This document shows, in pieces, positions 1-12,735 of a DNA stretch of 12,735 nucleotides. The translations under genes and the position numbers were made by a program. Positions within the stretch are counted from its first letter, which is position 1. Each line of letters begins with the position of its first letter. The stretch is taken from the sequence record OQ473814.1; one strand, 5' to 3'. Below the pieces are notes generated by a model, which saw only the letters and a program-made list of their open reading frames with translations, did no database searches and was not told the DNA's origin.

Positions 1-78
1 GCGTCTCGCGGCAGCGTCTCGCGGCAGCGTCTCGCGGCAGCGTCTCGCGGCAGCGTCTCGCGTCGGCGTCTCGCGAGG
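1..78 (+). repeat. Terminal tandem array of the 13-bp unit GCGTCTCGCGGCA
   Basis: Perfect units at 1-13, 14-26, 27-39 and 40-52; variants GCGTCTCGCGTCG (53-65) and GCGTCTCGCGAGG (66-78); CGAGG x3 at 74-88. Confidence 0.97.
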
Positions 79-201
79 CGAGGCGAGGCGTGAGGGTCGC
101 GAAGGGCAGCGCGTGGCATGGCGGACGCCCGCGGTCGCGGAGAGCCACGTGAGCGGAGCGTGGTCGAGGGGCGTAGGAGAGGAGGGCGTAGGAGAGAAGC
201 C
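1..201 (+). repeat. Left inverted terminal repeat (162-bp core 40-201 plus three extra 13-bp units at 1-39)
   Basis: 40-201 is the exact reverse complement of 12574-12735 (checked base by base); identity breaks at 202/12573. Confidence 0.98.
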
Positions 202-211
202 GGAGAGAAGC

Positions 212-271
212 GGACGGGTTAAGGGCGTTAGACCCGCCCCCCGCCTTAGGACGGAGTAGGGCGTTAGACCC
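212..271 (+). repeat. Subterminal direct repeat GGACGG-N3/4-AGGGCGTTAGACCC x2
   Basis: AGGGCGTTAGACCC is exact at 222-235 and 258-271, each preceded by GGACGG (212-217, 249-254). Confidence 0.85.
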
Positions 272-360
272 ATATCCCTAGGGGGGCAACTACCATGTCA
301 GACCCACGCAGACCCCGATCAGAATGAGCGTTGCCCCCCACATAAGGGTCGTGGCGGGGC

Positions 361-450
361 TTAAATAGGTTCGCCCCCGCGGTCGCGGTCTTCGCGGTAT
401 AGAAGGTCAAAGGGGATGCCGTGGTCCTTGAGGAGTTCGGGGAGGTTCAT
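361..450 (-). CDS. Small hypothetical protein, 29 aa (MNLPELLKDHGIPFDLLYREDRDRGGEPI), not in the ORF track
   Basis: ATG (450-448) overlaps the TGA of ORF 447-779 as ATGA; GAGGCG SD-like motif upstream; ends TAA at 363-361. Confidence 0.5.
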   Translation of the reverse strand: MNLPELLKDHGIPFDLLYREDRDRGGEPI

Positions 451-779
451 GTTGTCGCCTCTAGTCTCTTGAGACATTCACTGTACGGCAGAAATTTCGT
501 AGCCTCTTGGCATATGATGGGATAGAGTTCACGCGGTGGCGGTGAATTGTCTAGGTAGTCGGCAGCCGCGTCAATTAACTCTACGCAGAGTTTCTTGATG
601 CGGTCGTTATTGACGGACTTGAGGGTTACGATCGCGGACAGAACTAGGGATCTACCGTTAGCCCGTGATCTCCTACGGATATAGTTCGTTAGGCTAGTGG
701 ACAGGAGGTTCACGTAGACTTGATCCATGCCCTCTACGGGGATAGCCTCTAACTTAATTAGGAGGTCGCGGAGGGTCAT
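447..779 (-). CDS. Hypothetical alpha-helical protein, 110 aa; probable paralog of 12228-12572
   Basis: ATG coupled to the upstream stop (TAATG); VNLLSTSLTNYIR matches VNMLLNSLRLYLR of the right-terminal ORF. Confidence 0.85.
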   Translation of the reverse strand: MTLRDLLIKLEAIPVEGMDQVYVNLLSTSLTNYIRRRSRANGRSLVLSAIVTLKSVNNDRIKKLCVELIDAAADYLDNSPPPRELYPIICQEATKFLPYSECLKRLEATT

Positions 780-1486
780 TATTCATCACCCTTATTCAAT
801 TGGGATAGGTATTCTTGATAGTAGTAATGACCACGGCTTACTATCGTAAGTGCATGCTTACTGAACTTCCTATTGACTAGTTCGCCGGTATCCTCAATCA
901 AGATTAAGGCTTCGTAAGGCGTAACGCTATTGACTATACCGGTCCTTTCTTGATGCCCGTGCCATATCTTTACCGTGTCGCCCATGCATAGGACGTTAAA
1001 CCATACAAATTTGGCACAGTGCGTTGATATCATATCAAAGTACATCGAGGGGTCTCCGCGTTGTCCCGTTATGGGTTGTGGACCTCTAGTGATGTCTCTA
1101 GGCTTAGCCCTAGCCTTCTCAATCTCCGCCTCAAGTCTAGGCTTAACCGCGGGTATCATAATGTCCTCTTCTACGTCTATCTCTTCCTCTTCCTCTTTGC
1201 CCTGTAGGATATTGTAGGCGTACTGGACTAGTTTAGGGTCTACCTCGTACTCCTCAAGTATCCTAGAGAAGTCGGCGTATTCTTTGGCGTGTTCTCCCAT
1301 CATGTCAAAAATCTTAGGGAGAAGAATGTTGAGGTCCTTAACCCCGCTTAACTTAGATAGGTTGCGGGTATATCCCTCAACTTGTTTCTTTGCCTTCGGA
1401 TCACTTATTAACCCGATCAGGTCGTTATATGACTTGATCGGGGTCTTTTTTGGGGGTGAATCCCCCGCGTTTTGTGGGTTGTGCAT
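779..1486 (-). CDS. Hypothetical protein, 235 aa: helical N-domain, acidic linker, C-terminal SH3/KOW-like beta-barrel
   Basis: Long ORF with TTATAA 27-32 nt upstream; C-terminal GDTVKIWHG...TGIVNSV...ALILIEDTG pattern resembles KOW/SH3 barrels. Confidence 0.85.
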   Translation of the reverse strand: MHNPQNAGDSPPKKTPIKSYNDLIGLISDPKAKKQVEGYTRNLSKLSGVKDLNILLPKIFDMMGEHAKEYADFSRILEEYEVDPKLVQYAYNILQGKEEEEEIDVEEDIMIPAVKPRLEAEIEKARAKPRDITRGPQPITGQRGDPSMYFDMISTHCAKFVWFNVLCMGDTVKIWHGHQERTGIVNSVTPYEALILIEDTGELVNRKFSKHALTIVSRGHYYYQEYLSQLNKGDE

Positions 1487-1512
1487 TGTAGCCGATAATT
1501 CTTATTCGCCCC

Positions 1513-1518
1513 TTATAA
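1513..1518 (-). promoter_or_regulatory. TATA box for a probably leaderless leftward transcript (1486 -> 361)
   Basis: TTATAA lies 27-32 nt upstream of the ATG at 1486, the usual crenarchaeal leaderless spacing. Confidence 0.7.
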
Positions 1519-1655
1519 GTTGGCGTCGATAGGTACGATACTCGAACCTTATCTTGGCTAAGTGAATATAACGTGATTATCGGCAACTGAATATTTGGCA
1601 AATGCCGATATTATGAGGGTAAGCGTGAGAGGGTAGGTTAGGAGTTATAGGCAAG

Positions 1656-1665
1656 TATATATAAA
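1656..1665 (+). promoter_or_regulatory. TATA box (TATATATAAA) for the rightward early transcript
   Basis: Strongest AT-only element in the divergent intergenic region, preceded by purine-rich AGGCAAG (BRE-like) and ending 32 nt before ATG 1697. Confidence 0.7.
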
Positions 1666-1696
1666 GGGCGAGTGGGTAGGTAGGGATAGACCCAAA

Positions 1697-2080
1697 ATGT
1701 CAAATCCGAACCAAACCCAAAATCCGGGATTTGACGGGCTGGAGGCTTTTTTGGGGGAGAACGTAAGGACAACTATCTCCCTTTCGCCTAGTCAATCCCT
1801 TCTCGTGGTAGTCTTGAGCTACAAAGGTAAGAGGCAGTATAAGGGGAAGAACGGGGACTACGAGAAACTTGAGTTTGAGGTTAAGGTAGTCTCCGATAAC
1901 CTTAACGTGTACACGGGACTAGAGGGATCCCTTCTACTGAGTACCGCTCTGTACCCGCAAATTAGGAGGGCATTAACCAACAAGGAGACGTGCTGGAAGG
2001 TAACAAGGGGGAGAATAACGGAGTTGAGTAGTTTCCCCGCGGAGTTCTGTGCTAGCAAACTAGGAGGCGGGCAGGCATAA
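1697..2080 (+). CDS. Hypothetical protein, 127 aa; possible OB-fold ssDNA-binding protein
   Basis: First gene after the promoter; beta-rich pattern with a basic/aromatic hairpin (YKGKRQYKGKNGDYEKLEFEVKV), then a helix and WKVTR strand. CDS is secure; the fold call is tentative. Confidence 0.8.
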   Translation: MSNPNQTQNPGFDGLEAFLGENVRTTISLSPSQSLLVVVLSYKGKRQYKGKNGDYEKLEFEVKVVSDNLNVYTGLEGSLLLSTALYPQIRRALTNKETCWKVTRGRITELSSFPAEFCASKLGGGQA

Positions 2081-2091
2081 ACATCAACCAA

Positions 2092-2316
2092 ATGCAATTG
2101 CCCGAACAAGTTAAGGTCCACGCGTTCATGGATGATGACACGGAGATTACCATGGTAGTGGAAAGGTCCGATCTCCTAGAGTACGTGGAAGGGTTACGCG
2201 AGTTCTTAGTGGGGAAGGGATACAAGACTTCCACGTTTAAGGCAATCTCTAGGACCCATACCGTCTATATGACTTGGGACGCGGAGGGGTCTAACAGTGA
2301 GGATAGAGACGCTTAA
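2092..2316 (+). CDS. Hypothetical protein, 74 aa
   Basis: ATG 11 nt after the previous stop; fits the operon tiling. Confidence 0.8.
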   Translation: MQLPEQVKVHAFMDDDTEITMVVERSDLLEYVEGLREFLVGKGYKTSTFKAISRTHTVYMTWDAEGSNSEDRDA

Positions 2317-2479
2317 GGGGATAGTTAAGGAAGGTACCCGCGTTAAGGTAACTACGAACAACCACAGTTACGAGGGTACCATCTCCTACATGGATGACGC
2401 GGTTATCGTGAATACGGCGGACGGCAAAGTAGTCATAGTAGCCTCGGCGGTTAAGGAATTGACGGTATTGGGGGAGTAA
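2297..2479 (+). CDS. Sm/LSm/Hfq-like small beta-barrel protein, 60 aa
   Basis: GTG start with GGAGGGGT SD at 2283-2290; helix then [23 protein letters not shown]...[14 protein letters not shown] follows the Sm1/Sm2 pattern. CDS is likely; the fold is moderately supported. Confidence 0.7.
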   Translation: [60 protein letters not shown]

Positions 2480-2480
2480 C

Positions 2481-2657
2481 ATGACCCTTATCGTAATCAC
2501 GTTTAAGATAGACCGCGATACTCTAGACGTTTTGGACTCAGTGGCGGGGTCCCTCAAAATGAACAGGTCCGAGTTCATTAGGAGGGCGATAAGCCACGAG
2601 ATAGCGAGTTACGTGAATAAGGACGCAAAGGCTAGAGTTGAGAGGGTTAAGCTATGA
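2481..2657 (+). CDS. Ribbon-helix-helix (CopG/Arc/MetJ-like) DNA-binding protein, 58 aa; not in the ORF track
   Basis: MTLIVITFKIDRDTLDVLDSVAGSLKMNRSEFIRRAISHEIASYVNKDAKARVERVKL: ITFKID strand, helix, NRSEFIRRAI helix; GGGGAG SD; fills the gap exactly with an ATGA overlap at 2654-2657. Confidence 0.92.
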   Translation: MTLIVITFKIDRDTLDVLDSVAGSLKMNRSEFIRRAISHEIASYVNKDAKARVERVKL

Positions 2658-3061
2658 TCGACCTACCTATTCTTTCAATCGGACACTTTAAGGACGGCAG
2701 GACGGGGATGGAATTCAAGGGGATCATGATCTACAGTACTCAGACTTTCGTTATCGTAAAGGACCTAGACCATGAGAAATACTACTTGATCGAGCAGGAA
2801 AACGGCGGTGCCATGGATATCACGGAGGAGTGGACAAGTTACGTGAAAGAGCATGAGGACTTTGATAAAGCCGTAGACCTCACTATTTGGTTCATCAAGA
2901 AAAGCGTGCAGGCAGGGACGCCCGTAAATCCCTTAATCCCGCCTATGTTCGTGAACCAGATTGAGCCCGATATCGCGGAGATATTGAGGATCGTGCTAGC
3001 GAAACTTGAGAAAATGGTAGGGGAGGAGGAGGAAAATGCCGACACTCCTAGAGGAAACTGA
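2654..3061 (+). CDS. Hypothetical protein, 135 aa; probable paralog of 3036-3344
   Basis: ATGA-coupled to the RHH gene; YYLIEQENGGAMDITEEW motif resembles one in the next ORF. Confidence 0.85.
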   Translation: MIDLPILSIGHFKDGRTGMEFKGIMIYSTQTFVIVKDLDHEKYYLIEQENGGAMDITEEWTSYVKEHEDFDKAVDLTIWFIKKSVQAGTPVNPLIPPMFVNQIEPDIAEILRIVLAKLEKMVGEEEENADTPRGN

Positions 3062-3344
3062 CGGTAAGATTTATGTGTGGATAGATCCCGAACTCGTTAT
3101 CTACACTACGGACCGCGGGATCTACTTACAAACCGCGGACGGTAGAACCGTGGACGTAACCCACGCGTGGCAAAGGATTATGAGGAGTAACCCCGGCGAT
3201 TCAATCAAGATTTACTTGATCATGAACGCGGTCTACCTACGCAGAAAGTTCTACCATAAACCCGTGGATAGCCTAATTGAGGAATACGCGGAGTTAATCC
3301 GCCCTTACGTAGAACGACTAGTGAGGGAGGCCCTACGAGGATAG
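3036..3344 (+). CDS. Hypothetical protein, 102 aa; probable paralog of 2654-3061
   Basis: GGAGGAGG SD upstream of the ATG; motif IYLQTADGRTVDVTHAW. Confidence 0.85.
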   Translation: MPTLLEETDGKIYVWIDPELVIYTTDRGIYLQTADGRTVDVTHAWQRIMRSNPGDSIKIYLIMNAVYLRRKFYHKPVDSLIEEYAELIRPYVERLVREALRG

Positions 3345-3364
3345 ACCTATCCGATTGCTTTGAT

Positions 3365-3949
3365 ATGCCTAGGCTCACGAGTTTGGGCTTTAGGATAACT
3401 ACGCGGAGATGGACCATAGAGGACCTTAGCAAGATTGAGCAGTGTATGGGTGTGATTGAGAATTCCACGGAATTCCAAAGGTGCCTAGGTAGGAGGAGGA
3501 CGGACGTATTGGCGATCCGCAGGTATATCCTAGCTGTCCGTAACAAGGAAGCCCCGGCTATTCTCGTGGTACCGCCCGTTATTTCGGTGGAAGGGGTTCA
3601 ATCCGAACAGGGGGAGGAGGGGGGAGAAACGTGCAGTTCGATCGATGAGGGTGAACCCCTATGTGTATACGGGTGGTTTAACCCGGATTGCGTAGCGGAG
3701 GCAGTTACGGGTGCGTCTATGGACTACGCTACTGAACAAGCGGGGGATGAGGGTAGGATCAGGGTCAAATACGGGACGGGCGTAGAAGAACGCCCTTGTG
3801 ATAACCCGCAAATAGGTCCTATCGTAGATATCGAGTACCACGGGACTACAGTGTGCAGTGGCGAGGGATCCCTAGAGGAGTTAATGGAAGAGGCGTTACA
3901 ACACATAGATGAATACTTTGCGGAGATGGGGGAGGACTTCAATGAGTAG
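3365..3949 (+). CDS. Hypothetical protein, 194 aa: basic N-terminal Myb/SANT-like HTH candidate and acidic Cys-containing C-domain
   Basis: RRWTIEDLSKI...LGRRRTDVLAIRRYIL resembles the WT.E...LG.R...R Myb-type pattern; overlaps the next gene by 8 nt. Confidence 0.8.
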   Translation: MPRLTSLGFRITTRRWTIEDLSKIEQCMGVIENSTEFQRCLGRRRTDVLAIRRYILAVRNKEAPAILVVPPVISVEGVQSEQGEEGGETCSSIDEGEPLCVYGWFNPDCVAEAVTGASMDYATEQAGDEGRIRVKYGTGVEERPCDNPQIGPIVDIEYHGTTVCSGEGSLEELMEEALQHIDEYFAEMGEDFNE

Positions 3950-4313
3950 TTGGAGGGTACCCATAGACCCGGTTCACCCCTACGTAACGCTAGACTGGGA
4001 CGTGCGTTATGACACGCGACACTCTACCCTTAAGTGGCGGTCCATGGTAGCGTTTTTGACGGGGGCGGGGATTCACGAGGTCATGACAAGGCACAGTGCG
4101 GGCGGAAACACTCACGTGATCATTAAGTGGACCTACGACCTCACGTTTTGGGAGAGGCTAGTTATACGTTCAATTCTACAGGATGATCCCTACCGTATTA
4201 GTGCCGATATTAGACGTTACTACCGCGGTCTACCGGTTGAACGTTTATTCGGGATTAAGGCGACCCCGGGCGTTTTACGTAAAGCCGGACCGTGGACAAG
4301 AGAAACTTTTTAG
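3942..4313 (+). CDS. Minimal archaeo-eukaryotic primase (AEP)-like protein, 123 aa
   Basis: Start moved to ATG 3942 (GGAGGA SD at 3931-3936). Motif I VTLDWD (D18, D20), motif II RHSAGGNTHVII (S52, H58) and a motif III candidate QDDPYR (D81/D82) occur in AEP order. Confidence 0.7.
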   Translation: MSSWRVPIDPVHPYVTLDWDVRYDTRHSTLKWRSMVAFLTGAGIHEVMTRHSAGGNTHVIIKWTYDLTFWERLVIRSILQDDPYRISADIRRYYRGLPVERLFGIKATPGVLRKAGPWTRETF

Positions 4314-4335
4314 CCCGTTTATCGAGTAGCCGTTT

Positions 4336-4773
4336 ATGAGCGAACCAAATTCTCAAGGGCAAACGGAGGGGTCTAACCCCGCGGAAAAGCCTAAATCTAC
4401 CCCGCCTTCTAAGGTGGAATGTAGAATTTGCGGTAAGAAAGTGAACCCCGCGGGTCTACCACGCCACGAGTGGAGTCATATACCCGACATATACGACAAA
4501 ATGAAAGAGTTAGAGAACAAAATCGCGGAGTTAAAGGCAGTTCAAACTCAACCCGCCCCGGCAGTACCCTCAACTAGTACTCAACCTAACCCCGGGGCCG
4601 CCCCGGCGACCGTGAAAGTTAAGGACGTTAAGCCGTTATTGGACACCGTGCTAGAGCATGTAAAGAGTTGTCCGGAGTGCCGTAGGGAGTTAGGGGAGTG
4701 GCTAACTCAGAATACGAAACAATTCGCTGAGTGGTTCGTACCGGAGGACCAAAGAAAGAGGCTTAGGCTATGA
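4336..4773 (+). CDS. Zinc-finger protein, 145 aa: C2H2 finger, coiled coil, Pro-rich linker, HxxxCxxC motif
   Basis: C29-x2-C32-x11-H44-x3-H48; heptad DKMKELENKIAELKA; H108-x3-C112-x2-C115. Confidence 0.88.
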   Translation: MSEPNSQGQTEGSNPAEKPKSTPPSKVECRICGKKVNPAGLPRHEWSHIPDIYDKMKELENKIAELKAVQTQPAPAVPSTSTQPNPGAAPATVKVKDVKPLLDTVLEHVKSCPECRRELGEWLTQNTKQFAEWFVPEDQRKRLRL

Positions 4774-5264
4774 AAATTGAGATTGATCACGATAACGCGG
4801 ACAATAACCCCGCGGAGGGGGAGGAGGTTGAGGTAGTTGAGGAGGTAACTAAGACTGAACCTACGCCCGCGACTCCTCAACCTCAACCCGTAACTCCTCA
4901 ACCCGCCCCCGTGGATCCCCGCGTGGATCAACTTGAGAGTAGGATAGCTCAACTAGAGAATTCCTTTACTCAACTTACGGACGCCCTTAACAAGTACTTT
5001 AATGCTCAAGGGCAGGGGCAGGTACCTCAAGGACAAGGGCAGGGAGGGATGGAATGGTTAGGTCCCGTAGCTCAACTCCTAGGTAGTCTCTTTCAATCCC
5101 GCGGTGGTAGTGATCAACTGACTAGCGTGTTGTTAGGGCTAGCGATCGATAACCTAAAATCTAGTGCAGAATTGAACAGGGCGGTGGCGGGGGCGGTAGT
5201 AAAGAAACTTTTAGGCGAGGCTATCGCTAGTGAACTAGGAGAGGTGGTTGTAAGTCATGAGTAA
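4770..5264 (+). CDS. Acidic/Pro-rich coiled-coil protein with amphipathic C-terminal helices, 164 aa (possible scaffold or assembly factor)
   Basis: ATGA overlap; E/P-rich N-terminus, VDQLESRIAQLENS heptads, QG-rich linker, WLGPVAQLLGSLF helix. Confidence 0.85.
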   Translation: MKIEIDHDNADNNPAEGEEVEVVEEVTKTEPTPATPQPQPVTPQPAPVDPRVDQLESRIAQLENSFTQLTDALNKYFNAQGQGQVPQGQGQGGMEWLGPVAQLLGSLFQSRGGSDQLTSVLLGLAIDNLKSSAELNRAVAGAVVKKLLGEAIASELGEVVVSHE

Positions 5265-5448
5265 CGTAAGTAAGAAAGTGGATGAAATAACGAGAAAGAT
5301 GCAAGTCTACGAGTTCGTTAAGAGCCTCGCCCTAACACTAGGTATCCCCTTCCCGGACGCTATGGTTAAGGCGTACATAATGAGAACCGACATCAACAAG
5401 ATTAATGCGATCATAGAGAAGACTAGGGAGTGGATTAAGCATGTCTGA
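5257..5448 (+). CDS. Small helical hypothetical protein, 63 aa
   Basis: 8-nt overlaps with both neighbours. Confidence 0.8.
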   Translation: MSNVSKKVDEITRKMQVYEFVKSLALTLGIPFPDAMVKAYIMRTDINKINAIIEKTREWIKHV

Positions 5449-5764
5449 CGTAGACGTGAAATACGTTATCGACCACGAACTTGAGGAGGACCTTAAGTTT
5501 CGCGTACTTGTTGAGGAGTACCGCAGAAAGTTCATAGCGGAAATAAGGGAGGAGTGTCCGGACCTTACCCCGCAGTGTTGGGGACCTCAAGTTTGGGCTA
5601 GATTTCACGCTCTAGCCCTCGCAGTACCATGTCCGGCGTGCAGTAGTGAGGCTCAAGCATTCCTTAGTTTCTTCCACGATTACGTGAACAAACACCGCGG
5701 TAAGCCGTTATACGCCCCCGTAAACTACGAGAATGTCAAAAAGGAAATATGCCGTAATGCGTAA
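5441..5764 (+). CDS. Miniature Erv1/Alr-family (FAD-dependent) sulfhydryl oxidase, 107 aa
   Basis: All family hallmarks in order: WGPxxWxxFH (47-56), PCxxC (CPAC 64-67; nt 5630-5641), HDxVN (79-83, the HNxVN motif), GKP (87-89). Confidence 0.85.
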   Translation: MSDVDVKYVIDHELEEDLKFRVLVEEYRRKFIAEIREECPDLTPQCWGPQVWARFHALALAVPCPACSSEAQAFLSFFHDYVNKHRGKPLYAPVNYENVKKEICRNA

Positions 5765-5766
5765 TC

Positions 5767-5772
5767 TTTTTT
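5767..5772 (+). terminator. Oligo-T terminator after the 4336-5764 operon
   Basis: T6 starting 3 nt after TAA. Confidence 0.65.
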
Positions 5773-5804
5773 ACTTTCCCGCGTCAATCTTTACGTGAAC
5801 GACC

Positions 5805-6089
5805 ATGAAAGCAAAAAATCCAATCGCGTCTCAACTCAGTTCAGCCGTAAGGGATGCATGGGAAAGCCCTGAAGGTATGTCAATGAGGGAAAGAATGAGT
5901 GCACAGGCTTACGATTCCAACTTTGCGAATTGTCTAAGATCCGGAGCTAGGAGGAATGAGGCTTTTGCGGACGTGGTAAAGAGGTGCATGGCACAGACCG
6001 GGTACAATATCGACCTCGCTCAAGATTGGGGCTCTCCTAAGGAAAACGCTCCTAGGGTACAGGTACTGTCAGCTAGGGCAAGACTCTAG
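5805..6089 (+). CDS. Helical, mildly basic protein, 94 aa; candidate virion core/nucleoprotein
   Basis: First gene of the 3-gene block ending in the capsid-like gene; Arg/Lys-rich; two Cys. The function is inferred. Confidence 0.8.
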   Translation: MKAKNPIASQLSSAVRDAWESPEGMSMRERMSAQAYDSNFANCLRSGARRNEAFADVVKRCMAQTGYNIDLAQDWGSPKENAPRVQVLSARARL

Positions 6090-6095
6090 AGGTGG
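6089..6095 (+). promoter_or_regulatory. Shine-Dalgarno GAGGTGG for 6101
   Basis: Archaeal consensus SD, 5 nt before the ATG. Confidence 0.8.
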
Positions 6096-6100
6096 ACTAA

Positions 6101-6481
6101 ATGGACATTAAACAAGGACTAGGACCCGCCCTTGTGGGTGCGGGGGGTTACCTAGCGGGCGTAAATACCATCAAGAACTACATACAGCAATTAGGGAGTA
6201 AGATAAATTCCAATAACCCTACGCAGGGCGTTAAGATCATAGGACTTATCACTGTACTCGCGGGTGCAGGTATCAAGATAGCCATGGACTCCGCAATCGG
6301 GGACGGACTAGGGTATTTCTTGGCAGGACTCGGGGCAGGATTCCTTGCGGACCCCGTGCCAACACCGGCTCAGAATACCGCAGTAGCTAACGCAGTGCCA
6401 AAGCAAAACGTTACGGCTCAACCGGTCCCCGTAAAGGTACCGGCGACCGTAATGAATAATAGTACCCCCCAATACATCTAG
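6101..6481 (+). CDS. Virion membrane protein candidate, 126 aa (Gly/Ala-rich hydrophobic helices, Pro-rich tail)
   Basis: Hydrophobic GxxxG-rich segments (IIGLITVLAGAGIKIAM, LGYFLAGLGAGFLA); strong SD; directly upstream of the capsid gene. Confidence 0.85.
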   Translation: MDIKQGLGPALVGAGGYLAGVNTIKNYIQQLGSKINSNNPTQGVKIIGLITVLAGAGIKIAMDSAIGDGLGYFLAGLGAGFLADPVPTPAQNTAVANAVPKQNVTAQPVPVKVPATVMNNSTPQYI

Positions 6482-6487
6482 AGGTGA
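6481..6487 (+). promoter_or_regulatory. Shine-Dalgarno GAGGTGA for the capsid gene
   Basis: Perfect archaeal SD 5 nt before ATG 6493; the track's GTG start at 6484 lies inside this SD. Confidence 0.85.
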
Positions 6488-6492
6488 TTAAG

Positions 6493-6909
6493 ATGCCCAA
6501 AACCTATTACAGGACGTACCAGATTCAATTTAACGTAGGAGCTTCCCTACCCGCGAATTCCATAATCGCCGGGACTTTCGTAAATCTCGCGAACGGTAAG
6601 ACTGAGTCACAACTACAGGCTCCGTCAAACCAGACGTGGGATATCGTGGACATCTATATCAGGTCTACTAGCGACGATCCCCTAGACGCGACCGTAACAT
6701 TCACTAGGGACGACGTGAATAACCTGATAACGACCGATCCACTCAGTGCCCTAGTGGTAAGCAACCCATCAAGACCTAGGTACCCCGCTATCCGTCTCAA
6801 CCCCGGACAAAGACTTAGTGCGACCGCGACAACCCTCGCGACTAACGGGACCTCCGCCGTAACCGACTACGTGTTTGTAAAGGTGCAGGTAACCGACTAC
6901 TCCGCTTAA
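6493..6909 (+). CDS. Probable major capsid protein, single jelly-roll-like, 138 aa
   Basis: Best SD in the genome and T7 terminator just after; all-beta alternating pattern (TYQIQF, WDIVDIYI, ATVTFT, IRLNPGQRLSAT, YVFVKVQV); no TM helix. Confidence 0.7.
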   Translation: MPKTYYRTYQIQFNVGASLPANSIIAGTFVNLANGKTESQLQAPSNQTWDIVDIYIRSTSDDPLDATVTFTRDDVNNLITTDPLSALVVSNPSRPRYPAIRLNPGQRLSATATTLATNGTSAVTDYVFVKVQVTDYSA

Positions 6910-6918
6910 ACCAAACCC

Positions 6919-6925
6919 TTTTTTT
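6919..6925 (+). terminator. Oligo-T terminator after the capsid gene
   Basis: T7 10 nt after TAA within a long pyrimidine tract (6916-6947). Confidence 0.75.
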
Positions 6926-6954
6926 ATCCCCTTCCCCTTTCTATCTTGATAGTC

Positions 6955-7668
6955 ATGTCAAGTACCGGCGTGTTATGTCAAAAGGTAAGTAACATATCCC
7001 TAGGACCGCTATCGCTAGAGAACGCGGAGTTATGCTTTACGCAGACAGGTGAATACACGGGCAATATGAACGTAAAGGTATACTTCCTAGGCTATGACGT
7101 TATTAACGACAATTTCCCCGTAGCCCTCACGGTACCATGGTATCAGGCTAGTTCTCAAACTCAAGTTGCGGTACAGTTTGGTAATCCTATTACGGAGGAC
7201 GTAGTTACTCTCCTACTCAATATAGGGCAGGACATAAACGAGTTAGCTACCGCCCTAGGATACTCCGGTGTTCTTTCAATTACGGACGCCCATATAGACG
7301 CTAACGGCGATCTAGTCTTTACGGTGAACGCGACCTCTCCCCCCGTGATCATAATCCTCGCGATCATATTCGTGATCGCCCTAGCTATCCTAGTTTACAT
7401 AGGCGGACAAAGTGCCAGTGCCGTGATCACGTCAATTAACGGAGTTCAACCATCTCCGCCCAATTGTGCTAACTTAACCCAACAGGAATGTGCCCAACAG
7501 TACCAACTCTACTATCAGGCTTATCAGCAGTACTCTACGAACAAGGGTATCTCTAGCGTAGGCGTCTCCGTGTCCGGGATAGCGATCGCTCTAGGGATAG
7601 GTGCGGTCCTAATAGGCGGTATCGTACTAGCCAATAGGAGATCAAGACAAAGCGGTGTACCCACATGA
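6955..7668 (+). CDS. Virion membrane protein candidate, 237 aa: beta-rich N-domain, two TM helices, two Cys pairs
   Basis: ATG 6955 preferred over TTG 6946; TM1 VIIILAIIFVIALAILVYIGG, TM2 IAIALGIGAVLIGGIVLA followed by RRSR. Confidence 0.85.
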   Translation: MSSTGVLCQKVSNISLGPLSLENAELCFTQTGEYTGNMNVKVYFLGYDVINDNFPVALTVPWYQASSQTQVAVQFGNPITEDVVTLLLNIGQDINELATALGYSGVLSITDAHIDANGDLVFTVNATSPPVIIILAIIFVIALAILVYIGGQSASAVITSINGVQPSPPNCANLTQQECAQQYQLYYQAYQQYSTNKGISSVGVSVSGIAIALGIGAVLIGGIVLANRRSRQSGVPT

Positions 7669-7964
7669 CCGTACAACTCCTAACTAATGCGATCCAAACA
7701 ATTCACCAAAACGTGCAGAATGCCCCTAGGTATGACGTCAATATCAACGGTACCCTACACATAGTAGTAGCTCCGCAAAGTTCTGTGGTACTAACCCTAT
7801 GGTTAAACGGAATACCCGCAGTACTAAATCAAGGCAATAGTTTGTCAGGCGGGGCATGGTATGACTTTGACGGCATAGAGGTCCTACAGGGAGATGAAAT
7901 ACAAATTACGGGTAACGTGGACACGCAGGGATTTTTGCGAATGTATGTGAAAAGCGTATTTTAG
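7665..7964 (+). CDS. Small beta-sandwich (jelly-roll-like) minor structural protein, 99 aa
   Basis: ATGA overlap; all-beta pattern with LNQGNSLSGGAWYDFDGIEVLQGDEIQI. Confidence 0.8.
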   Translation: MTVQLLTNAIQTIHQNVQNAPRYDVNINGTLHIVVAPQSSVVLTLWLNGIPAVLNQGNSLSGGAWYDFDGIEVLQGDEIQITGNVDTQGFLRMYVKSVF

Positions 7965-8006
7965 GGGTGGTCCACTACGGATATAGTTACGGTAAGTGTT
8001 TTGACC

Positions 8007-8234
8007 ATGGAAAACGTGGTTACGTGGGTTTTACTTGCCCGAGTAAATGCGGGACTCGGGAAGGCTATCGAGCAGTGGACCCGTGCCCTAGATCACCTTA
8101 AGCAAAGTAACGAGGCTCTAGAGCGTGCTAGTCAGGAATTAGCTCAAGGTAATCAAGAGCTTAAGGAAGTTAAGGACCAACTAAGCATAATAGCCCAATT
8201 GCTCAAGTCATTAAGCGGAGGGTATCCCACATGA
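8007..8234 (+). CDS. Coiled-coil protein, 75 aa
   Basis: ATG 8007 (TTG 8001 alternative); long heptad run LDHLKQSNEALERASQELAQGNQELKEVKDQL. Confidence 0.8.
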   Translation: MENVVTWVLLARVNAGLGKAIEQWTRALDHLKQSNEALERASQELAQGNQELKEVKDQLSIIAQLLKSLSGGYPT

Positions 8235-8494
8235 GCGTAAATATCTCTGACGGGCTCTATAACTCGGGCGGTAACACCATGACCCCTACGCAATTTCTGA
8301 GTTCTCTAAATCAGGGGGGTAGTTCATGCCCCAATTGTCAATCCACTACGCAGTCTACCACGCAGTCTAGCGGTCAATCCATGCCCTCAACGATTAACGT
8401 ATCCATAAGGGGATATAACTTTGTGGACGTTATCATTATCGGGGCTCTAGTGTCCCTTACGGCGATAGCGAGTTACTACCTAGCCAAAAGTTAG
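8231..8494 (+). CDS. Tail-anchored small membrane protein with CPNC motif, 87 aa
   Basis: ATGA overlap; CPNC, QSTT/QSS repeats, C-terminal TM VDVIIIGALVSLTAIASYYLAK. Confidence 0.82.
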   Translation: MSVNISDGLYNSGGNTMTPTQFLSSLNQGGSSCPNCQSTTQSTTQSSGQSMPSTINVSIRGYNFVDVIIIGALVSLTAIASYYLAKS

Positions 8495-8496
8495 GG

Positions 8497-8502
8497 TTTT
8501 TT
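8497..8502 (+). terminator. Oligo-T terminator (second T6 at 8516-8521)
   Basis: T6 starting 3 nt after TAG 8494. Confidence 0.6.
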
Positions 8503-8533
8503 ATCTCGATTACGCTTTTTTCCATGAGACAGT

Positions 8534-9571
8534 ATGTTACGACCTACGATTGTAAAGGAAAGGGGTGTAATCTCTAGATATATCACGTCAATAGAGCCGG
8601 TTCTAACTACGTGGATGCATGACGCCGGTAGGGATGAACTCCCTAGCCTTATGAGATTAGCGGGTCTAGGTAGAAGACACGGTAAACTGTGGAGAGCTAG
8701 CCTACAGGGTAACGTAGGTCCCTTTACTAGGGACATAGAGATGCTTATCTTCCCGCCATTCTTGTTATCCACGGGACCTAGCGGACCCGTAACCGTGACC
8801 TATCCCCTTAACGGATCCTCGCCTATCTCCGCCACGACTTTCCTCCTAGATATTATCGCGGGCGGTGGTGCCGGTGGCGGGGGCGGTGGCGGTGGATCCT
8901 CCGCCCCCGGACAAGGTGGCGGTGGTGGTGCCGACGGCGGTAGGCTAGTGGTTAAGTTCAGTGGCGGTGCGATCGACACAGGTACAGTAACGGTACCCGG
9001 ACCTAGTGCCGGTGGTGCCGGTGGTTCAGGTGGTGCAGGATCTAACGGACAAAACGGCGGAAACACTACCGTTTCCTTAAACTCCGCGACCGCGACACTA
9101 CAGTCTCAGGGACTCCCCGCGTTTACCATGCCCGCCCCTGTAGGCGGACAATACGCCGGTGGGCAGGGTGGTGCGGGCGGTAACGCCGTACTACAATACG
9201 ATAAGAGCATCTCTCCCTCATTCTTCCTAGAGCTAGGCGGACTTAATCAAGGGGCTTACGCAAATAACTCGCAGATACTTAGCGACTCAGTAGGTACAGG
9301 GGGTTACGGAGTAAACTCGGAGTATCTCAACTTCTCAGGTAGAGGTCTATGGACTAGATCAACCGCGGGTGTAAGCGGTGGTGCAAATACGGGTTCAGGT
9401 ACCGCAGGTTCAGGTGGTGCTAACGCCTACGTAAACGTGCCCTCCGGGTCTATCTACGGTAGAGGTGCCGGTGCGGGCGGTGGCGGTGGCGGTTCAGGTA
9501 GCACGCCCGGGGCAGGTGGTCCCGGTGGACAAGGCGGTCCCGGACTTGTAATAATGCTAGTGGTGGCGTAA
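8534..9571 (+). CDS. Glycine-rich (polyglycine II bundle type) adhesin/spike candidate, 345 aa (alternative start ATG 8741, 276 aa)
   Basis: LLDIIAGGGAGGGG...GGGGADGG...GQNGGNTTV...GAGGPGGQGGPGLVIMLV matches the layout of Gly-rich domains of phage tail adhesins and ALK/LTK. Confidence 0.85.
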   Translation: MLRPTIVKERGVISRYITSIEPVLTTWMHDAGRDELPSLMRLAGLGRRHGKLWRASLQGNVGPFTRDIEMLIFPPFLLSTGPSGPVTVTYPLNGSSPISATTFLLDIIAGGGAGGGGGGGGSSAPGQGGGGGADGGRLVVKFSGGAIDTGTVTVPGPSAGGAGGSGGAGSNGQNGGNTTVSLNSATATLQSQGLPAFTMPAPVGGQYAGGQGGAGGNAVLQYDKSISPSFFLELGGLNQGAYANNSQILSDSVGTGGYGVNSEYLNFSGRGLWTRSTAGVSGGANTGSGTAGSGGANAYVNVPSGSIYGRGAGAGGGGGGSGSTPGAGGPGGQGGPGLVIMLVVA

Positions 9572-9572
9572 C

Positions 9573-11180
9573 ATGATACTAGTAACGTCAGGTGCAGGAG
9601 GTGGTTCAGGACCCACGACATCAACGACTCAGCAATCCGTACAGGTAATCAATAACTCAGATTATTACGTGCAGGTTGCGGTACAGGGACAGAACGCTCA
9701 ACTCAGTAGTTACGTGAATCTAGCCCCTAACGAAAGTAAGTTCATAAACTACGAGGGTACAGCGACCGGGCTCAGTGTAATCTACTTTACGGACTCCTCC
9801 TACTCCGTAAGTATCTATTCAACGACCCTTCCAATAGGTCCCTCCGTTATAGTACCTAACCCGCCCTCTCAGTATACCACGCCAAAGACTACGACCACTA
9901 GCTCTACGTCTAGCTCAAGTTCAGGATCCACTGGGACTAGCTCAACGTCTACGGGGACTAGTTCGGGGAGTTCGGGATCTACAGGGTCTACAGGATCCAC
10001 GGGGTCTAGCGGTTTTCAGCTCTGTTATCCTTCCTATATTACGCAGTATCAGAACTTCCCTACGGACTTCCTACCGGCTAACTGTAACGCCGGACAACTC
10101 AAGGCTTATGGTAATTTCAGTGTTCAATTCTTCTACGAGAACGGTAATCCCTACAACCTAGGAGTGTCTCAAGTTGAGGTTACGGTCTATCAGGGCTCTA
10201 CTATCGTGGACCAAGGTACCCTCCCCGTAACTCAGGGTGGTAGCGTAGTTCAGGGATGGTTCATATTCTTCTACGACCTACCTGACACTAAGGTCCACAT
10301 TAAGGTCCCTGTCCCTCAAGGTTATACAATACAAGGATTTACGCCACAGAACGGTTACGTGGACTACGTACTAGATTACGGTTACGCAGGGAGTGAGGGG
10401 ACTGAGGCTTACCTAGTGCAGATAACCCCTCAACCTACTCAACCACAAGGTACTCCGGTACAGGTTACGCTCATAAACGACCTAGGATGTACAGTTACGG
10501 TTACGTGGTCCGGCGGTTCAGTTACACTACAGGCAGGTCAATCCCAACAAGTTACGGTGCCGAGTTACCCGGACGCAGGGACGGAGTTCAACGTGTACCT
10601 ACCGGGTGCGACTAGCGGGTGCGGATCGAGTTTTGGACCAATTACCGCGAACCAAACTATCTATCTCAGTTACCTAGGGTGTAGTGTATGTCCCTCAACG
10701 ACCCCGCCAACGGGTGGACAAGGTGCTACGACTACCACGGGGACTACGACCACGACCTCTACCACTACCCCGCCAAGTTCAACCGTAACGACCACGCTAG
10801 TGAACCCGTGTAACGTTAAACTAACGGCGACCTATAACGGGCAGACCTACACGCTTAACCCGGGTTATAATCAACTTAATGGACCTCCGGGGACTATCAC
10901 CGTGTCCTATAACGGTCAGACCATAGGAGTCTATAACGCCGGGGGGATTCAGACAGTATCGTGTCCATCTCCTCCCTCAACTACGACCACTACGACCACT
11001 ACGACCACTACCACGACCGGGACCGGGACAGGGACAAGTACAGGGACAGGGACAGGTACTACTACCCCGCCCTCAACCACTCCGCCCTCAACTCCTATGA
11101 TAGACTACGTGATAATAGGCGGTGCCGTGGTAGGGCTAGGTGCCCTACTGTACTACCTTAACAAGAGGGGACGCAGATGA
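9573..11180 (+). CDS. Large modular tail-anchored spike/surface protein, 535 aa: beta domains joined by Ser/Thr/Gly/Pro stalks, C-terminal TM
   Basis: Beta-rich domains, three low-complexity linkers, 8 Cys, TM IDYVIIGGAVVGLGALLYYL followed by NKRGRR. Confidence 0.9.
   Translation: MILVTSGAGGGSGPTTSTTQQSVQVINNSDYYVQVAVQGQNAQLSSYVNLAPNESKFINYEGTATGLSVIYFTDSSYSVSIYSTTLPIGPSVIVPNPPSQYTTPKTTTTSSTSSSSSGSTGTSSTSTGTSSGSSGSTGSTGSTGSSGFQLCYPSYITQYQNFPTDFLPANCNAGQLKAYGNFSVQFFYENGNPYNLGVSQVEVTVYQGSTIVDQGTLPVTQGGSVVQGWFIFFYDLPDTKVHIKVPVPQGYTIQGFTPQNGYVDYVLDYGYAGSEGTEAYLVQITPQPTQPQGTPVQVTLINDLGCTVTVTWSGGSVTLQAGQSQQVTVPSYPDAGTEFNVYLPGATSGCGSSFGPITANQTIYLSYLGCSVCPSTTPPTGGQGATTTTGTTTTTSTTTPPSSTVTTTLVNPCNVKLTATYNGQTYTLNPGYNQLNGPPGTITVSYNGQTIGVYNAGGIQTVSCPSPPSTTTTTTTTTTTTTGTGTGTSTGTGTGTTTPPSTTPPSTPMIDYVIIGGAVVGLGALLYYLNKRGRR
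10980..11054 (+). repeat. Coding tandem repeats (ACTACGACC x3, then GGGACA-type hexamers) encoding the Thr and Thr-Gly stalk
   Basis: ACTACGACC at 10980-11006; GGGACC/GGGACA/AGTACA units at 11019-11054. Confidence 0.85.
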
Positions 11181-11566: not shown

Positions 11567-11569
11567 ACC

Positions 11570-12573: not shown

Positions 12574-12735
12574 GGCTTCTCTCCTACGCCCTCCTCTCCT
12601 ACGCCCCTCGACCACGCTCCGCTCACGTGGCTCTCCGCGACCGCGGGCGTCCGCCATGCCACGCGCTGCCCTTCGCGACCCTCACGCCTCGCCTCGCCTC
12701 GCGAGACGCCGACGCGAGACGCTGCCGCGAGACGC
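12574..12735 (-). repeat. Right inverted terminal repeat (162 bp)
   Basis: Exact reverse complement of 40-201; carries one perfect 13-bp unit plus the two variant units. Confidence 0.98.

What the first reader, a model, noticed from the sequence alone, without database searches (positions are those of the whole stretch)
1..88. Telomere-like terminal array: variable copy number, same register at both ends, degenerate inner copies
Seen: the left end has four perfect GCGTCTCGCGGCA units and the right end has one. Both ends stop at exactly the same base of the unit (5'-GCGTC...). Inward the units decay (...GTCG, ...GAGG) into CGAGG x3. Perfect-outer, degenerate-inner arrays are what telomere turnover produces. 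Inference: ends may gain or lose whole 13-bp units by slippage/realignment or repeat-templated priming, giving length-heterogeneous termini. Unit 6 also holds an imperfect palindrome (CGTCTCGCGAGGCG, 67-80), so the 3' end (12726-12734) can fold back on 12695-12703 with 8/9 pairs.
Basis: partly seen in the sequence, partly recalled or inferred. Interest (0 to 1): 0.85.

Follow-up and report, generated by a model that had tools for sequence, protein, structure and literature searches.

The report
Repeat-tipped terminal repeat of archaeal virus MTIV3
The 13-base repeats are real and form the outer tip of the inverted terminal repeat of a known linear archaeal virus genome (MTIV3), but the "four copies left, one copy right" difference comes from an unverified short-read assembly, so the telomere-like behaviour is a reasonable idea that has not been shown.

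Summary
[quoted passage not shown] It was assembled from 150-nt Illumina reads with SPAdes, and the ends were never mapped.

**What holds.** The array is there as described:
- four perfect GCGTCTCGCGGCA units at 1-52;
- two decayed units at 53-78;
- CGAGG x3;
- one perfect plus the same two decayed units at the right end.

It is the outer part of a 162-nt, 100 % identical inverted terminal repeat (ITR) that is about 75 % G+C.

**What does not hold.** The 4-versus-1 asymmetry cannot be trusted. At least 113 nt of ITR separate the array from unique DNA, so neither a k-mer nor a single read can assign a copy number to one arm. The proposed fold-back is no more stable than shuffled sequence.

**Relatives.** None carries this 13-mer, but all end in short reiterations: C11/C12 and CCTCCTC8 in MTIV-like genomes, (GA)5GGATG11 in MTIV4, and CA(CT)8G5-6 in sphaerolipoviruses, which have terminal proteins.

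**Genes.** MTIV3 encodes no recognisable polymerase, terminal protein, Rep, resolvase or reverse transcriptase. One conserved 110-aa protein (ORF14) has primase-polymerase-like motifs and is shared with other polymerase-less linear archaeal viruses. This is a lead, not a demonstration.

**Best reading.** A reiterated replication-origin terminus that is maintained by slip-back or realignment priming. Reads are needed to test it.

The parts
1..52 (+). Four perfect 13-nt units GCGTCTCGCGGCA. Units 1-3 (1-39) have no counterpart at the right end.
53..78 (+). Two decayed units, GCGTCTCGCGTCG and GCGTCTCGCGAGG. The second holds the palindrome core CTCGCGAG (70-77).
73..90 (+). 5-nt repeat GCGAG/CGAGG, 3.6 copies, at the inner edge of the array.
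40..201 (+). Left arm of the inverted terminal repeat: 162 nt shared with the right end, 201 nt with the three extra units. Positions 1-201 are 74.6 % G+C against 50.4 % for the genome body.
12574..12735 (-). Right arm of the inverted terminal repeat, 100 % complementary to 40-201. It holds one perfect unit (12723-12735), two decayed units (12697-12722) and the 5-nt repeat (12685-12702).
128..140 (+). CCCGCGGTCGCGG box inside the ITR. It is mirrored at 12635-12647 and repeated exactly at 376-388 in the left arm. It is a candidate protein-binding site. The homologous place in the closest relative, L090, carries this motif as a tandem array.
169..211 (+). Inner ITR direct repeats, GGGCGTAGGAGAG x2 (169-198) and GGAGAGAAGC x2 (191-211). 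They span the inner ITR boundary at 201.
3909..4313 (+). ORF14, a core gene of all MTIV-like viruses. It is a small RRM-like protein with invariant DxD, S..GN.H, DD and R motifs, and is a candidate end-replication enzyme (primase-polymerase-like). This is inference.
3365..3949 (+). ORF13, a core gene next to ORF14. Its N-terminal three-helix region may bind DNA. The structure model has low confidence.
4336..4773 (+). ORF15, a core gene with a weak C2HC zinc-finger match that lies below the Pfam cut-off.
2481..2657 (+). ORF10, a ribbon-helix-helix DNA-binding protein. It is the only Pfam match in the genome that passes its curated cut-off.

Best explanation
The 88-bp array is the outermost, very G+C-rich part of the inverted terminal repeat of the linear dsDNA genome of the archaeal virus MTIV3. 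It most likely belongs to the terminal replication origin.

On this reading, the reiterated end lets DNA synthesis start at an internal copy of the repeat. The short nascent product, primed by a protein or by a primase, then slips back or realigns on an outer copy, so no terminal information is lost. A mechanism of this kind keeps the outer copies identical, leaves the inner copies free to decay, and can add or drop whole units.

Shown: the array, its position in the ITR, and the perfect identity of the two ITR arms.

Inferred: the priming mechanism, the identity of the enzyme (a host polymerase, plus possibly the conserved ORF14 protein), and any real heterogeneity in length. The deposited 4-versus-1 copy numbers, and possibly the exact terminal base, are properties of the assembly rather than measured properties of the molecule.
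For: **Identity**
- The window is 100 % identical to OQ473814.1, MTIV3, a linear record.
- MTIV genomes are described as linear with 109-353-bp ITRs.

**ITR and array**
- The two ITR arms are 162 nt and 100 % identical, and the array is at their outer end.
- The array is far beyond chance.

**Reiterated termini recur in relatives**
- MTIV1 ends in C12. MTIV2 has C11 at one end and C12 at the other. Metagenomic genome L005 ends in C6 and L008 in CCTCCTC8.
- MTIV4 ends in (GA)5GGATG11, curated from read mapping.
- SH1 and HHIV-2 end in CA(CT)8G5-6, and HCIV-1 in TCA(TC)8. These sphaerolipoviruses have 5'-terminal proteins and no polymerase gene.

**Mechanism precedent**
- Terminal reiterations are what sliding-back and jumping-back use in phi29, PRD1, Bam35 and adenovirus.

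**Shared gene**
- ORF14 is a core MTIV gene.
- Related proteins occur in HCIV-1 (hhalign probability 93 %, E 3e-7), HHIV-2, AFV1 and AFV2 (Foldseek E from 6e-5 to 1e-3).
- Another ITR-bearing 12.4-kb contig, L097, also carries one.
Against: - There are no read-level or biochemical data. The ends were not mapped, and GenBank calls the record partial.
- No relative carries this 13-mer, so nothing shows that the unit is conserved or that its number varies.
- Known slip-back units are 1-3 nt. A 13-nt unit would be unprecedented.
- No terminal protein or protein-priming polymerase is recognisable.
- The primase-polymerase reading of ORF14 is not statistically supported. The best PDB fold hits have E 0.09-0.5 and TM 0.33-0.40. 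There is no Pfam or PDB sequence hit, and hhalign against the pRN1 primase-polymerase is not significant.
- If the true termini extend beyond the record, for example into a C/G run as in relatives, the array would be subterminal. It would then more likely be a binding-site array.
Confidence: 0.55

Rival explanations
1. Assembly-limited ends. The array is real viral sequence, but its copy number, the left/right asymmetry and the shared terminal base are products of short-read de Bruijn assembly across an ITR and a tandem repeat. The real termini have equal copy numbers, or more units, or further sequence such as a C/G homopolymer.
For: - The data are Illumina PE150 reads assembled with SPAdes 3.13. 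Gaps were closed by PCR and no end determination is reported.
- GenBank calls the record a 'partial genome'.
- The array's inner edge (88) is 113 nt, and the last perfect unit (52) is 149 nt, from the ITR boundary (201). No k-mer and essentially no single 150-nt read can tie a unit count to one arm (sequence arithmetic).
- Both ITR arms share the same graph edge, so an identical register at both ends is expected from assembly alone.
- The first MTIV4 assembly had truncated ITRs that needed manual extension from reads.
- Independent Logan assemblies of near-identical MTIV3 stop 30 nt inside the ITR at both ends, covering window 172-12603.
- An unrelated bacterial contig (L050) also ends inside a 13-nt tandem array.
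- All relatives with curated ends carry C/G runs that MTIV3 lacks.
Against: - A symmetric graph path (ITR, unique region, ITR') should give symmetric ends. An exact three-unit difference is not an obvious assembler outcome, and could itself reflect a mixture of end lengths in the reads.
- The perfect stretches of 62 nt and 23 nt do not correspond to SPAdes default k values (21, 33, 55, 77).
Confidence: 0.5
2. The repeats are an iteron-type binding-site array. On this reading they bind a viral DNA-binding protein (ribbon-helix-helix ORF10, ORF13 or zinc-finger ORF15) or a host one. That protein would serve origin recognition, end protection or packaging, and the repeats would play no part in templated slippage.
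For: - The 13-mers lie head to tail, at roughly 1.2 helical turns each, and each contains CGCG.
- Further repeated boxes lie just inside: CGAGG x3, GGGCGTAGGAGAG x2, and CCCGCGGTCGCGG, which occurs in both ITR arms and at 376-388.
- The closest relative, L090, has a 13-nt-period array of the GGTCGCG box at the position homologous to 376-395.
- The genome encodes small DNA-binding proteins.
Against: - No protein-DNA data exist.
- The 13-mer is not conserved in any relative.
- This reading does not by itself explain the perfect-outer, decayed-inner gradient.
- It is compatible with, rather than exclusive of, the slip-back model.
Confidence: 0.3
3. Hairpin or self-priming ends. The terminal strand folds back, as in rudiviruses, poxviruses, protelomerase replicons or parvoviruses, and the palindrome at 67-80 nucleates the fold.
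For: - There is an imperfect 14-nt palindrome at 67-80.
- Pairing of 12726-12734 with 12695-12703 gives 8/9 pairs (and sequence).
Against: - The terminal 60-150 nt of either strand fold no better than shuffles: z is +0.39, +0.74, +1.22, -0.97, +1.69 and +0.16.
- The palindrome is internal, not terminal.
- No protelomerase, Holliday-junction resolvase or HUH Rep is found.
- The ORF14 family lacks a conserved catalytic tyrosine.
- The assembly does not run through a head-to-head junction.
Confidence: 0.04
4. Telomerase-like or other untemplated or RNA-templated addition of 13-nt units.
For: The only support is the formal resemblance: perfect outer units and decayed inner units.
Against: - No reverse transcriptase is found in any ORF, and there is no Rfam match.
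- The unit has no G/C strand bias: A1 C5 G5 T2 per unit.
- Archaeal hosts are not known to have telomerase (established knowledge).
Confidence: 0.02

Closest known systems
ITRs of the other Metallosphaera turreted icosahedral viruses (MTIV1, MTIV2, MTIV4) and metagenomic MTIV-like genomes
   Same: - Linear 9.6-14-kb genomes with 109-373-bp ITRs.
- Shared core genes (ORF13-16, 18-23 and 26).
- Ends made of a reiterated short sequence. The length of that sequence can differ between the two ends of one record: C11 versus C12 in MTIV2.
   Different: - Their reiterations are homopolymers or 2-3-nt units (C6-C12, CCTCCTC8, (GA)5..G11). MTIV3 has a 13-nt unit and no C/G run.
- There is no sequence similarity between the MTIV3 ITR and theirs.
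- Their ITRs contain A/T-rich TTTAAA boxes, whereas the MTIV3 ITR is 75 % G+C.
Alphasphaerolipoviruses SH1, PH1, HHIV-2 and HCIV-1 (haloarchaeal icosahedral membrane-containing viruses)
   Same: - Linear dsDNA with ITRs and no polymerase gene.
- Termini begin with a reiteration, CA(CT)8 followed by G5-6. This resembles the MTIV4 motif (GA)5GGATG11.
- They encode a protein related to MTIV3 ORF14.
   Different: - 5'-terminal proteins are shown experimentally for them and not for any MTIV.
- The genomes are 28-31 kb, with different capsid proteins.
- The repeat unit is 2 nt rather than 13 nt.
Protein-primed replication origins of phi29, PRD1, Bam35 and adenovirus (sliding-back / jumping-back)
   Same: The linear genome has ITRs and a terminal reiteration. 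Initiation at an internal template position is followed by backward translocation to recover the end.
   Different: - Those systems encode a family-B protein-priming polymerase and a terminal protein. Neither is detectable in MTIV3.
- Their units are 1-3 nt.
Streptomyces linear plasmid and chromosome telomeres (terminal-protein end patching with host polymerases)
   Same: - Linear replicon with ITRs and G+C-rich ends.
- No dedicated replicative polymerase.
- This model was proposed in the literature for the polymerase-less sphaerolipoviruses.
   Different: - Streptomyces telomeres are defined by several strong palindromes in the 3' overhang. The MTIV3 ends show no significant folding.
- No Tpg- or Tap-like protein is detected.
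Eukaryotic telomeres and the 'telomere-like' TTGTT repeats reported at the ends of lipothrixvirus AFV1
   Same: Short direct repeats are clustered at the ends of a linear genome. AFV1 also encodes a fold relative of ORF14. The description of the AFV1 ends is from my own knowledge and was not checked here.
   Different: MTIV3 has no strand-biased unit, no reverse transcriptase and a 13-nt unit.

Membership tests
Inverted terminal repeat of a linear MTIV-group virus genome | The sequence belongs to an MTIV-group virus. | tested here: met
   - The window is 100 % identical over 12735 nt to OQ473814.1.
- The major capsid protein is 48-58 % identical to those of MTIV1, MTIV2 and SPV3.
- Eleven syntenic core genes are shared.
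Inverted terminal repeat of a linear MTIV-group virus genome | The two ends of the record are reverse complements of each other. | tested here: met
   40-201 and 12574-12735 are 162 nt and 100 % complementary.
Inverted terminal repeat of a linear MTIV-group virus genome | The record's ends are the physical ends of the molecule. | not testable with these tools
   - No reads are available, the ends are unmapped, and the record is flagged partial.
- Independent Logan contigs stop inside the ITR.
Protein-primed origins with terminal reiteration (phi29, PRD1, adenovirus, SH1 type) | A short sequence is reiterated at the very end of the template. | tested here: met
   There are four perfect 13-mers at the left end and one at the right end of the record. 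This holds only if the record's ends are the true ends.
Protein-primed origins with terminal reiteration (phi29, PRD1, adenovirus, SH1 type) | [quoted passage not shown] | not testable with these tools
   This needs exonuclease and proteinase K assays on virion DNA. It has been shown for PH1 and SH1, and suggested for HCIV-1.
Protein-primed origins with terminal reiteration (phi29, PRD1, adenovirus, SH1 type) | The genome encodes a family-B protein-priming DNA polymerase. | tested here: not met
   - Pfam searches of 28 ORFs and PHROGs searches of 10 ORFs give no polymerase.
- The largest non-structural ORF is 235 aa.
Hairpin telomeres (rudivirus, poxvirus, protelomerase replicons) | There is a terminal palindrome or a stable fold-back of the end. 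| tested here: not met
   - Folding z-scores run from -0.97 to +1.69.
- The only palindrome is internal and imperfect, at 67-80.
Hairpin telomeres (rudivirus, poxvirus, protelomerase replicons) | The genome encodes a resolvase, a protelomerase or an HUH Rep. | tested here: not met
   - There are no such Pfam or PHROGs matches.
- The ORF14 family has no conserved tyrosine.
Telomerase-type telomeres | The unit is short and strand-biased (G-rich 3' strand), and a reverse transcriptase with a template is present. | tested here: not met
   - The unit composition is A1 C5 G5 T2.
- No RT is found and there is no Rfam hit.
Streptomyces-type telomeres | Several strong palindromes lie in the terminal 150 nt or so, and Tpg/Tap proteins are encoded. 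| tested here: not met
   There is no significant folding of 100-150-nt terminal strands and no matching protein family.
Archaeo-eukaryotic primase / primase-polymerase superfamily (for ORF14, 3909-4313) | Motifs I (hhhDhD/E), II (sxH) and III (hD/E), plus Rh in some families, occur in this order. The motif definitions are from PMC5862659. | tested here: met
   - In the window sequence the motifs are V26-T27-L28-D29-W30-D31; G66-N67-T68-H69; D92-D93; and R112-L113. Relatives have I at 26 and H at 30.
- Across 119 diverse members D29, S63, D93 and R96 are invariant, and D31, H69 and D92 are at least 90 % conserved.
- The same motifs occur in HCIV-1 ORF36.
- A pattern match alone is weak evidence.
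Archaeo-eukaryotic primase / primase-polymerase superfamily (for ORF14, 3909-4313) | There is significant sequence or profile similarity to known members. | tested here: not met
   - Pfam gives none.
- Profile searches of the PDB give none.
- hhalign against the pRN1 ORF904 primase-polymerase domain has probability 0.1 %. It aligns only 9 residues, at residues 140-148 of the pRN1 protein, where my recollection places its motif II.
Archaeo-eukaryotic primase / primase-polymerase superfamily (for ORF14, 3909-4313) | The protein has the fold of the catalytic core. | tested here: inconclusive
   - The model has pLDDT 82 and pTM 0.74.
- Members of this superfamily lead the PDB hits: Prim-PolC, the LigD polymerase domain, CAPP and PriS. 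However, E is 0.09-0.9 and TM 0.24-0.40.
- Other RRM-like proteins score similarly.

The most novel reading that the evidence does not exclude
MTIV-like viruses, sphaerolipoviruses and some lipothrixviruses may share a previously unrecognised way of replicating the ends of a linear genome. None of them has a known polymerase.

In this reading, a miniature nucleotidyl-transferase of about 110 aa with primase-polymerase-like motifs (the ORF14 family) primes or extends at reiterated termini, alone or on a terminal protein. The product then realigns on the repeats. MTIV3 would be the extreme case, with a 13-nt realignment unit whose number truly varies between molecules.
Probability: 0.15. Interest if true: 0.85.

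Novelty: new variant of a known kind. Interest (0 to 1): 0.45.

Why it matters
How crenarchaeal and haloarchaeal viruses with linear genomes and no polymerase gene copy their ends is an open question. The literature read here says so explicitly for MTIV and for SH1, PH1 and HCIV-1.

- **A convenient read-out.** If the 13-mer array really is the physical terminus and varies in unit number, MTIV3 would make end maintenance easy to follow, because whole 13-nt steps are easy to count in reads.
- **A candidate enzyme.** The conserved ORF14 family could be tested biochemically.
- **The alternative outcome.** If reads show that the ends are simply truncated, the finding reduces to an ordinary ITR with internal repeats.

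Tried and rejected
- **The 13-mer elsewhere.**
  - The exact double unit has 0 hits in IMG/VR.
  - The relaxed pattern GCGTCTCGCGNNNGCGTCTCGCG has 1 unrelated hit in IMG/VR.
  - It has 41 hits in GTDB genomes. By their titles nearly all are high-G+C bacteria, none is a Sulfolobales genome, and most have 2 copies.
  - I treat these hits as chance or independent microsatellites.
  - No MTIV-like locus contains GCGTCTCGCG.
- **An independent assembly of the MTIV3 ends.**
  - Exact-protein look-ups for the end-proximal genes and for the ORFs lying in the ITR returned only the GenBank record.
  - A similarity search with the ITR-encoded peptide found only itself.
  - The Logan contig of a near-identical virus stops 30 nt inside the ITR.
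- **Fold-back or hairpin.** Rejected on the folding statistics.
- **RNA elements.** No Rfam hit. The bacterial-type promoter and terminator scan of 1-800 gave nothing meaningful.
- **Replication proteins.** Pfam and PHROGs gave no polymerase, terminal protein, Rep, integrase or resolvase.
- **ORF13 structure model.** Too poor to search with, at pLDDT 49.
- **ORF14 against known primase-polymerases by sequence.** Negative.
- **C14 at the start of L090.** I considered it as proof that the MTIV3 ends are truncated. Alignment shows that L090 1-160 corresponds to window 300-400 or so, with a different and shorter left arm. The C14 may be a terminus or an internal break, so it is not decisive.
- **Wagner et al. 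2017 (MTIV1 and MTIV2).** The paper could not be read here, so how the C12 ends were determined is unknown to me. C-rich ends in independent metagenome contigs and the G11 run in MTIV4 argue that they are real.

Full report
[quoted passage not shown] The host is Metallosphaera prunae D4-4 and the source is a Tengchong hot spring. The record's own title says "partial genome". The describing paper (PMC10101205) reports Illumina 2x150 reads, SPAdes 3.13.0 and PCR closure of gaps. It calls the genome complete and never mentions terminal repeats or end mapping. A 2026 preprint on MTIV4 states that MTIV genomes are linear. It gives the other MTIVs terminal repeats of 160-353 bp and MTIV4 109-bp repeats with the terminal motif (GA)5GGAT(G)11. 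It also says the first MTIV4 assembly had truncated terminal repeats, which had to be extended by hand from reads.

**Check of the observation.**
  - Positions 1-52 are four perfect GCGTCTCGCGGCA units.
  - Positions 53-65 and 66-78 are decayed units (…TCG, …AGG).
  - CGAGG repeats follow.
- The right end, read as its reverse complement, has one perfect unit followed by the same decayed units.
- Positions 40-201 and 12574-12735 form a 162-nt, 100 % identical inverted repeat. The ends therefore differ by exactly 39 nt, three units, and stop at the same base of the unit.
- The array is far beyond chance: 7 matches against 0.17 expected, and 0 of 200 shuffles reach 7.
- Positions 1-88 are 77 % G+C and the ITR is 75 %, against 50 % for the rest of the genome. 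The unit has no strand bias (A1 C5 G5 T2).

**Is the 4-versus-1 difference a property of the molecule?** It cannot be read that way.
- The array is separated from unique sequence by 113 nt (88 to 201), or 149 nt counted from the last perfect unit. That is longer than any SPAdes k-mer and about the length of a read. Neither k-mers nor single reads can attach a unit count to the left or the right arm; only read pairs could.
- Both ITR arms are one and the same path in the assembly graph, so the same register at both ends is expected from assembly alone.
- The left end does show that reads with at least four perfect units exist.
- I could not find an independent assembly of the ends.
  - A Logan contig from run SRR29654726 is 99.89 % identical to the window but spans only 172-12603. 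It breaks 30 nt inside each ITR arm.
  - Look-ups through ITR-encoded peptides returned only the GenBank record.

**Relatives.**
- A search with a capsid-protein profile found MTIV1, MTIV2, four IMG/VR contigs and 32 metagenome contigs.
- None contains the 13-mer, and it occurs nowhere else except as chance hits in high-G+C bacteria.
- Every relative with an ITR that reaches the end does start with a reiterated short sequence.
  - MTIV1 starts with C12.
  - MTIV2 has C11 at one end and C12 at the other.
  - L005 starts with C6 and L008/L028 with CCTCCTC8.
  - MTIV4 has (GA)5GGATG11.
- The closest relative of MTIV3 is L090 (69 % nucleotide identity, Logan run SRR1297186). Its contig begins with C14. 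It carries a 13-nt-period array (CGGTCGCGGGTCG x2.7) at the place homologous to window 376-395. In MTIV3 the box CCCGCGGTCGCGG sits there, and the same box occurs in both ITR arms.
- Whether that C14 is a terminus or an internal break cannot be told.

**Hairpin idea.** The 8/9 pairing is arithmetically right. However, the terminal 60, 100 and 150 nt of either strand fold no better than dinucleotide shuffles (z from -0.97 to +1.69). The only palindrome (67-80) is internal and imperfect. No resolvase, protelomerase or HUH Rep is encoded.

**Gene content.**
- Of 28 ORFs scanned against Pfam, only a ribbon-helix-helix protein (ORF10) passes its curated cut-off.
- Weaker, below-cut-off matches are a C2HC zinc finger (ORF15), a glycine-rich domain (ORF26) and the SPV1 capsid protein (ORF21).
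- No polymerase, terminal protein, Rep, integrase or reverse transcriptase is found. Rfam finds nothing.
- The ORFs annotated inside the ITR (1-273, 12421-12657) have no relatives and are probably not genes.

**A lead on the enzyme: ORF14.**
- Conservation:
  - ORF14 (3909-4313) is a core gene of all MTIV-like genomes.
  - A full HMM search found 199 small relatives.
  - Across 119 of them D29, S63, D93 and R96 are invariant, and D31, R61, H69, R87, D92, D100, R103 and K117 are at least 90 % conserved.
- Motifs: the order DxD … S..GN.H … DD … R-h matches motifs I-IV of archaeo-eukaryotic primases and primase-polymerases as defined in PMC5862659.
- Fold:
  - A confident model (pLDDT 82) has an RRM-like fold.
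  - Its best PDB matches are led by that superfamily: Prim-PolC, the LigD polymerase domain, CAPP and PriS.
  - The scores are not significant, with E 0.09-0.9 and TM 0.24-0.40.
- Sequence tests against Pfam, the PDB and the pRN1 primase-polymerase are negative. Membership is therefore unproven.
- Distribution, which is clearer: fold or profile relatives occur in several other linear archaeal viruses.
  - HHIV-2 (E 5.6e-5).
  - HCIV-1 ORF36 (hhalign probability 93 %, E 3e-7, with the same three motifs).
  - AFV1 and AFV2, and a betalipothrixvirus.
  - Another 12.4-kb contig with a 127-bp ITR.
- For the sphaerolipoviruses among them, the papers read here report no polymerase gene. For the lipothrixviruses, a linear genome without a recognised polymerase is my recollection.
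- The sphaerolipoviruses have terminal proteins, and their ends begin CA(CT)8G5-6. That is a reiteration followed by a G run, much like MTIV4.

**Most likely mechanism.**
- Shown: a reiterated, G+C-rich tip on a perfectly homogenised ITR of a linear virus genome.
- Inferred by analogy:
  - The tip is the template for initiation of end replication.
  - Synthesis starts on an inner copy and the short product slips back onto an outer copy.
  - This is the documented principle for phi29 (1 nt), PRD1 (stepwise) and adenovirus (3 nt).
- Such a process keeps the outer copies identical, lets the inner ones decay, and can change the unit number.
- Unknown: who primes (a terminal protein, an ORF14-type enzyme or a host enzyme).
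- A 13-nt step would be without precedent, which is a reason for caution.
- Equally live is the possibility that the record is short of the real termini and the array is a subterminal binding-site array.

**Comparison and novelty.** This is an ITR of a known virus group, and the kind of feature is known: a reiterated terminus of a linear, probably protein- or primase-primed replicon. The 13-nt unit has not been described in the papers I could read and differs from all relatives. I therefore rate it a new variant of a known kind.
- It fails the tests for hairpin, telomerase-type and Streptomyces-type telomeres.
- It lacks the polymerase that defines classical protein-primed systems.

**Verdict.** Interest is moderate (0.45). 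The array itself is a solid but small feature, and its most exciting property, variable length, is untested and confounded by assembly. The test is cheap, because public read sets exist. The wider pattern is worth following up: reiterated ends together with a conserved mini-enzyme across linear archaeal viruses that have no recognised polymerase.

Noticed in passing
window 3909-4313 (ORF14); L092 1282-1842 (HCIV-1 ORF36); L097 3188-3532: A family of small proteins of about 110 aa has invariant DxD / S..GN.H / DD / R motifs and an RRM-like fold. It is shared by MTIV-like viruses, sphaerolipoviruses (HHIV-2, HCIV-1), lipothrixviruses (AFV1, AFV2) and other ITR-bearing contigs. It has 199 relatives in the 1.84-billion-protein library, no Pfam family and no name.
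   Followed up: partly
L094, L095, L096 positions 1-25 (SH1, HCIV-1, HHIV-2); MTIV4 preprint: The sphaerolipovirus termini CA(CT)8G5-6 and the MTIV4 terminal motif (GA)5GGATG11 have the same build: a dinucleotide repeat followed by a G run. The viruses come from different archaeal phyla and different virus families.
   Followed up: partly
L090 1-120 (Logan SRR1297186 contig, 5645 nt): The closest relative of MTIV3 (69 % nucleotide identity; ORF14 79 % amino-acid identity) starts with C14. It has a perfect 13-nt-period array CGGTCGCGGGTCG x2.7 at 85-119, and it lacks an ORF3 homologue. The virus is undescribed, and it is unclear whether the C14 is its terminus.
   Followed up: partly
window 128-140, 376-388, 12635-12647: The exact 13-nt box CCCGCGGTCGCGG occurs in both ITR arms and once more in the left arm (4 matches with at most 1 mismatch against 0.09 expected). 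It is a likely protein-binding site.
   Followed up: partly
L004 (OQ473816.1, 'Sulfolobus polyhedral virus 3' / STIV3), 2371-2778 and 13705-14118: The 18-kb record carries two diverged copies of the whole MTIV-like structural and core module (capsid protein, ORF14, 15, 18, 19, 20, 22 and 23 homologues twice). It has no ITR at its ends. It may be a chimeric assembly of two related viruses or a real duplication.
   Followed up: no
L085-L089 (SRR29654726, SRR35357517, SRR25278307, DRR807706, ERZ27233560): Virus that is 99.9 % identical to MTIV3 (96 % in one ENA assembly) is present in several unrelated public sequencing runs. Those runs could be used to map the ends.
   Followed up: partly
window 1-273 (-) and 12421-12657 (-): The GenBank ORF1 and ORF33 lie in the G+C-rich ITR. 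They are arginine-rich, have no relatives and are probably not genes. All six frames are open across the array.
   Followed up: partly
window 8534-11180 (ORF26, ORF27): ORF26 has long Gly-rich runs and a weak Pfam Gly_rich_2 match; it is homologous to the MTIV structural protein a339. ORF27 (535 aa) has long Thr/Ser tracts and a C-terminal membrane anchor and is probably the turret or spike protein. Their DNA repeats dominate the repeat finder's output.
   Followed up: no
L097 (JGI 3300033990, Ga0373184_0007613, 12417 nt): This is an apparently complete linear genome with a 127-bp ITR and 47 % G+C. It carries an ORF14-family gene but is otherwise unlike the MTIVs. It is an undescribed element.
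   Followed up: no
L002 versus L003 ends (MTIV1, MTIV2): The two ends of MTIV2 differ by one C (C11 / C12). The ITR arms of MTIV1 differ at 2 positions. The MTIV3 ITR arms are identical over all 162 nt.
   Followed up: no
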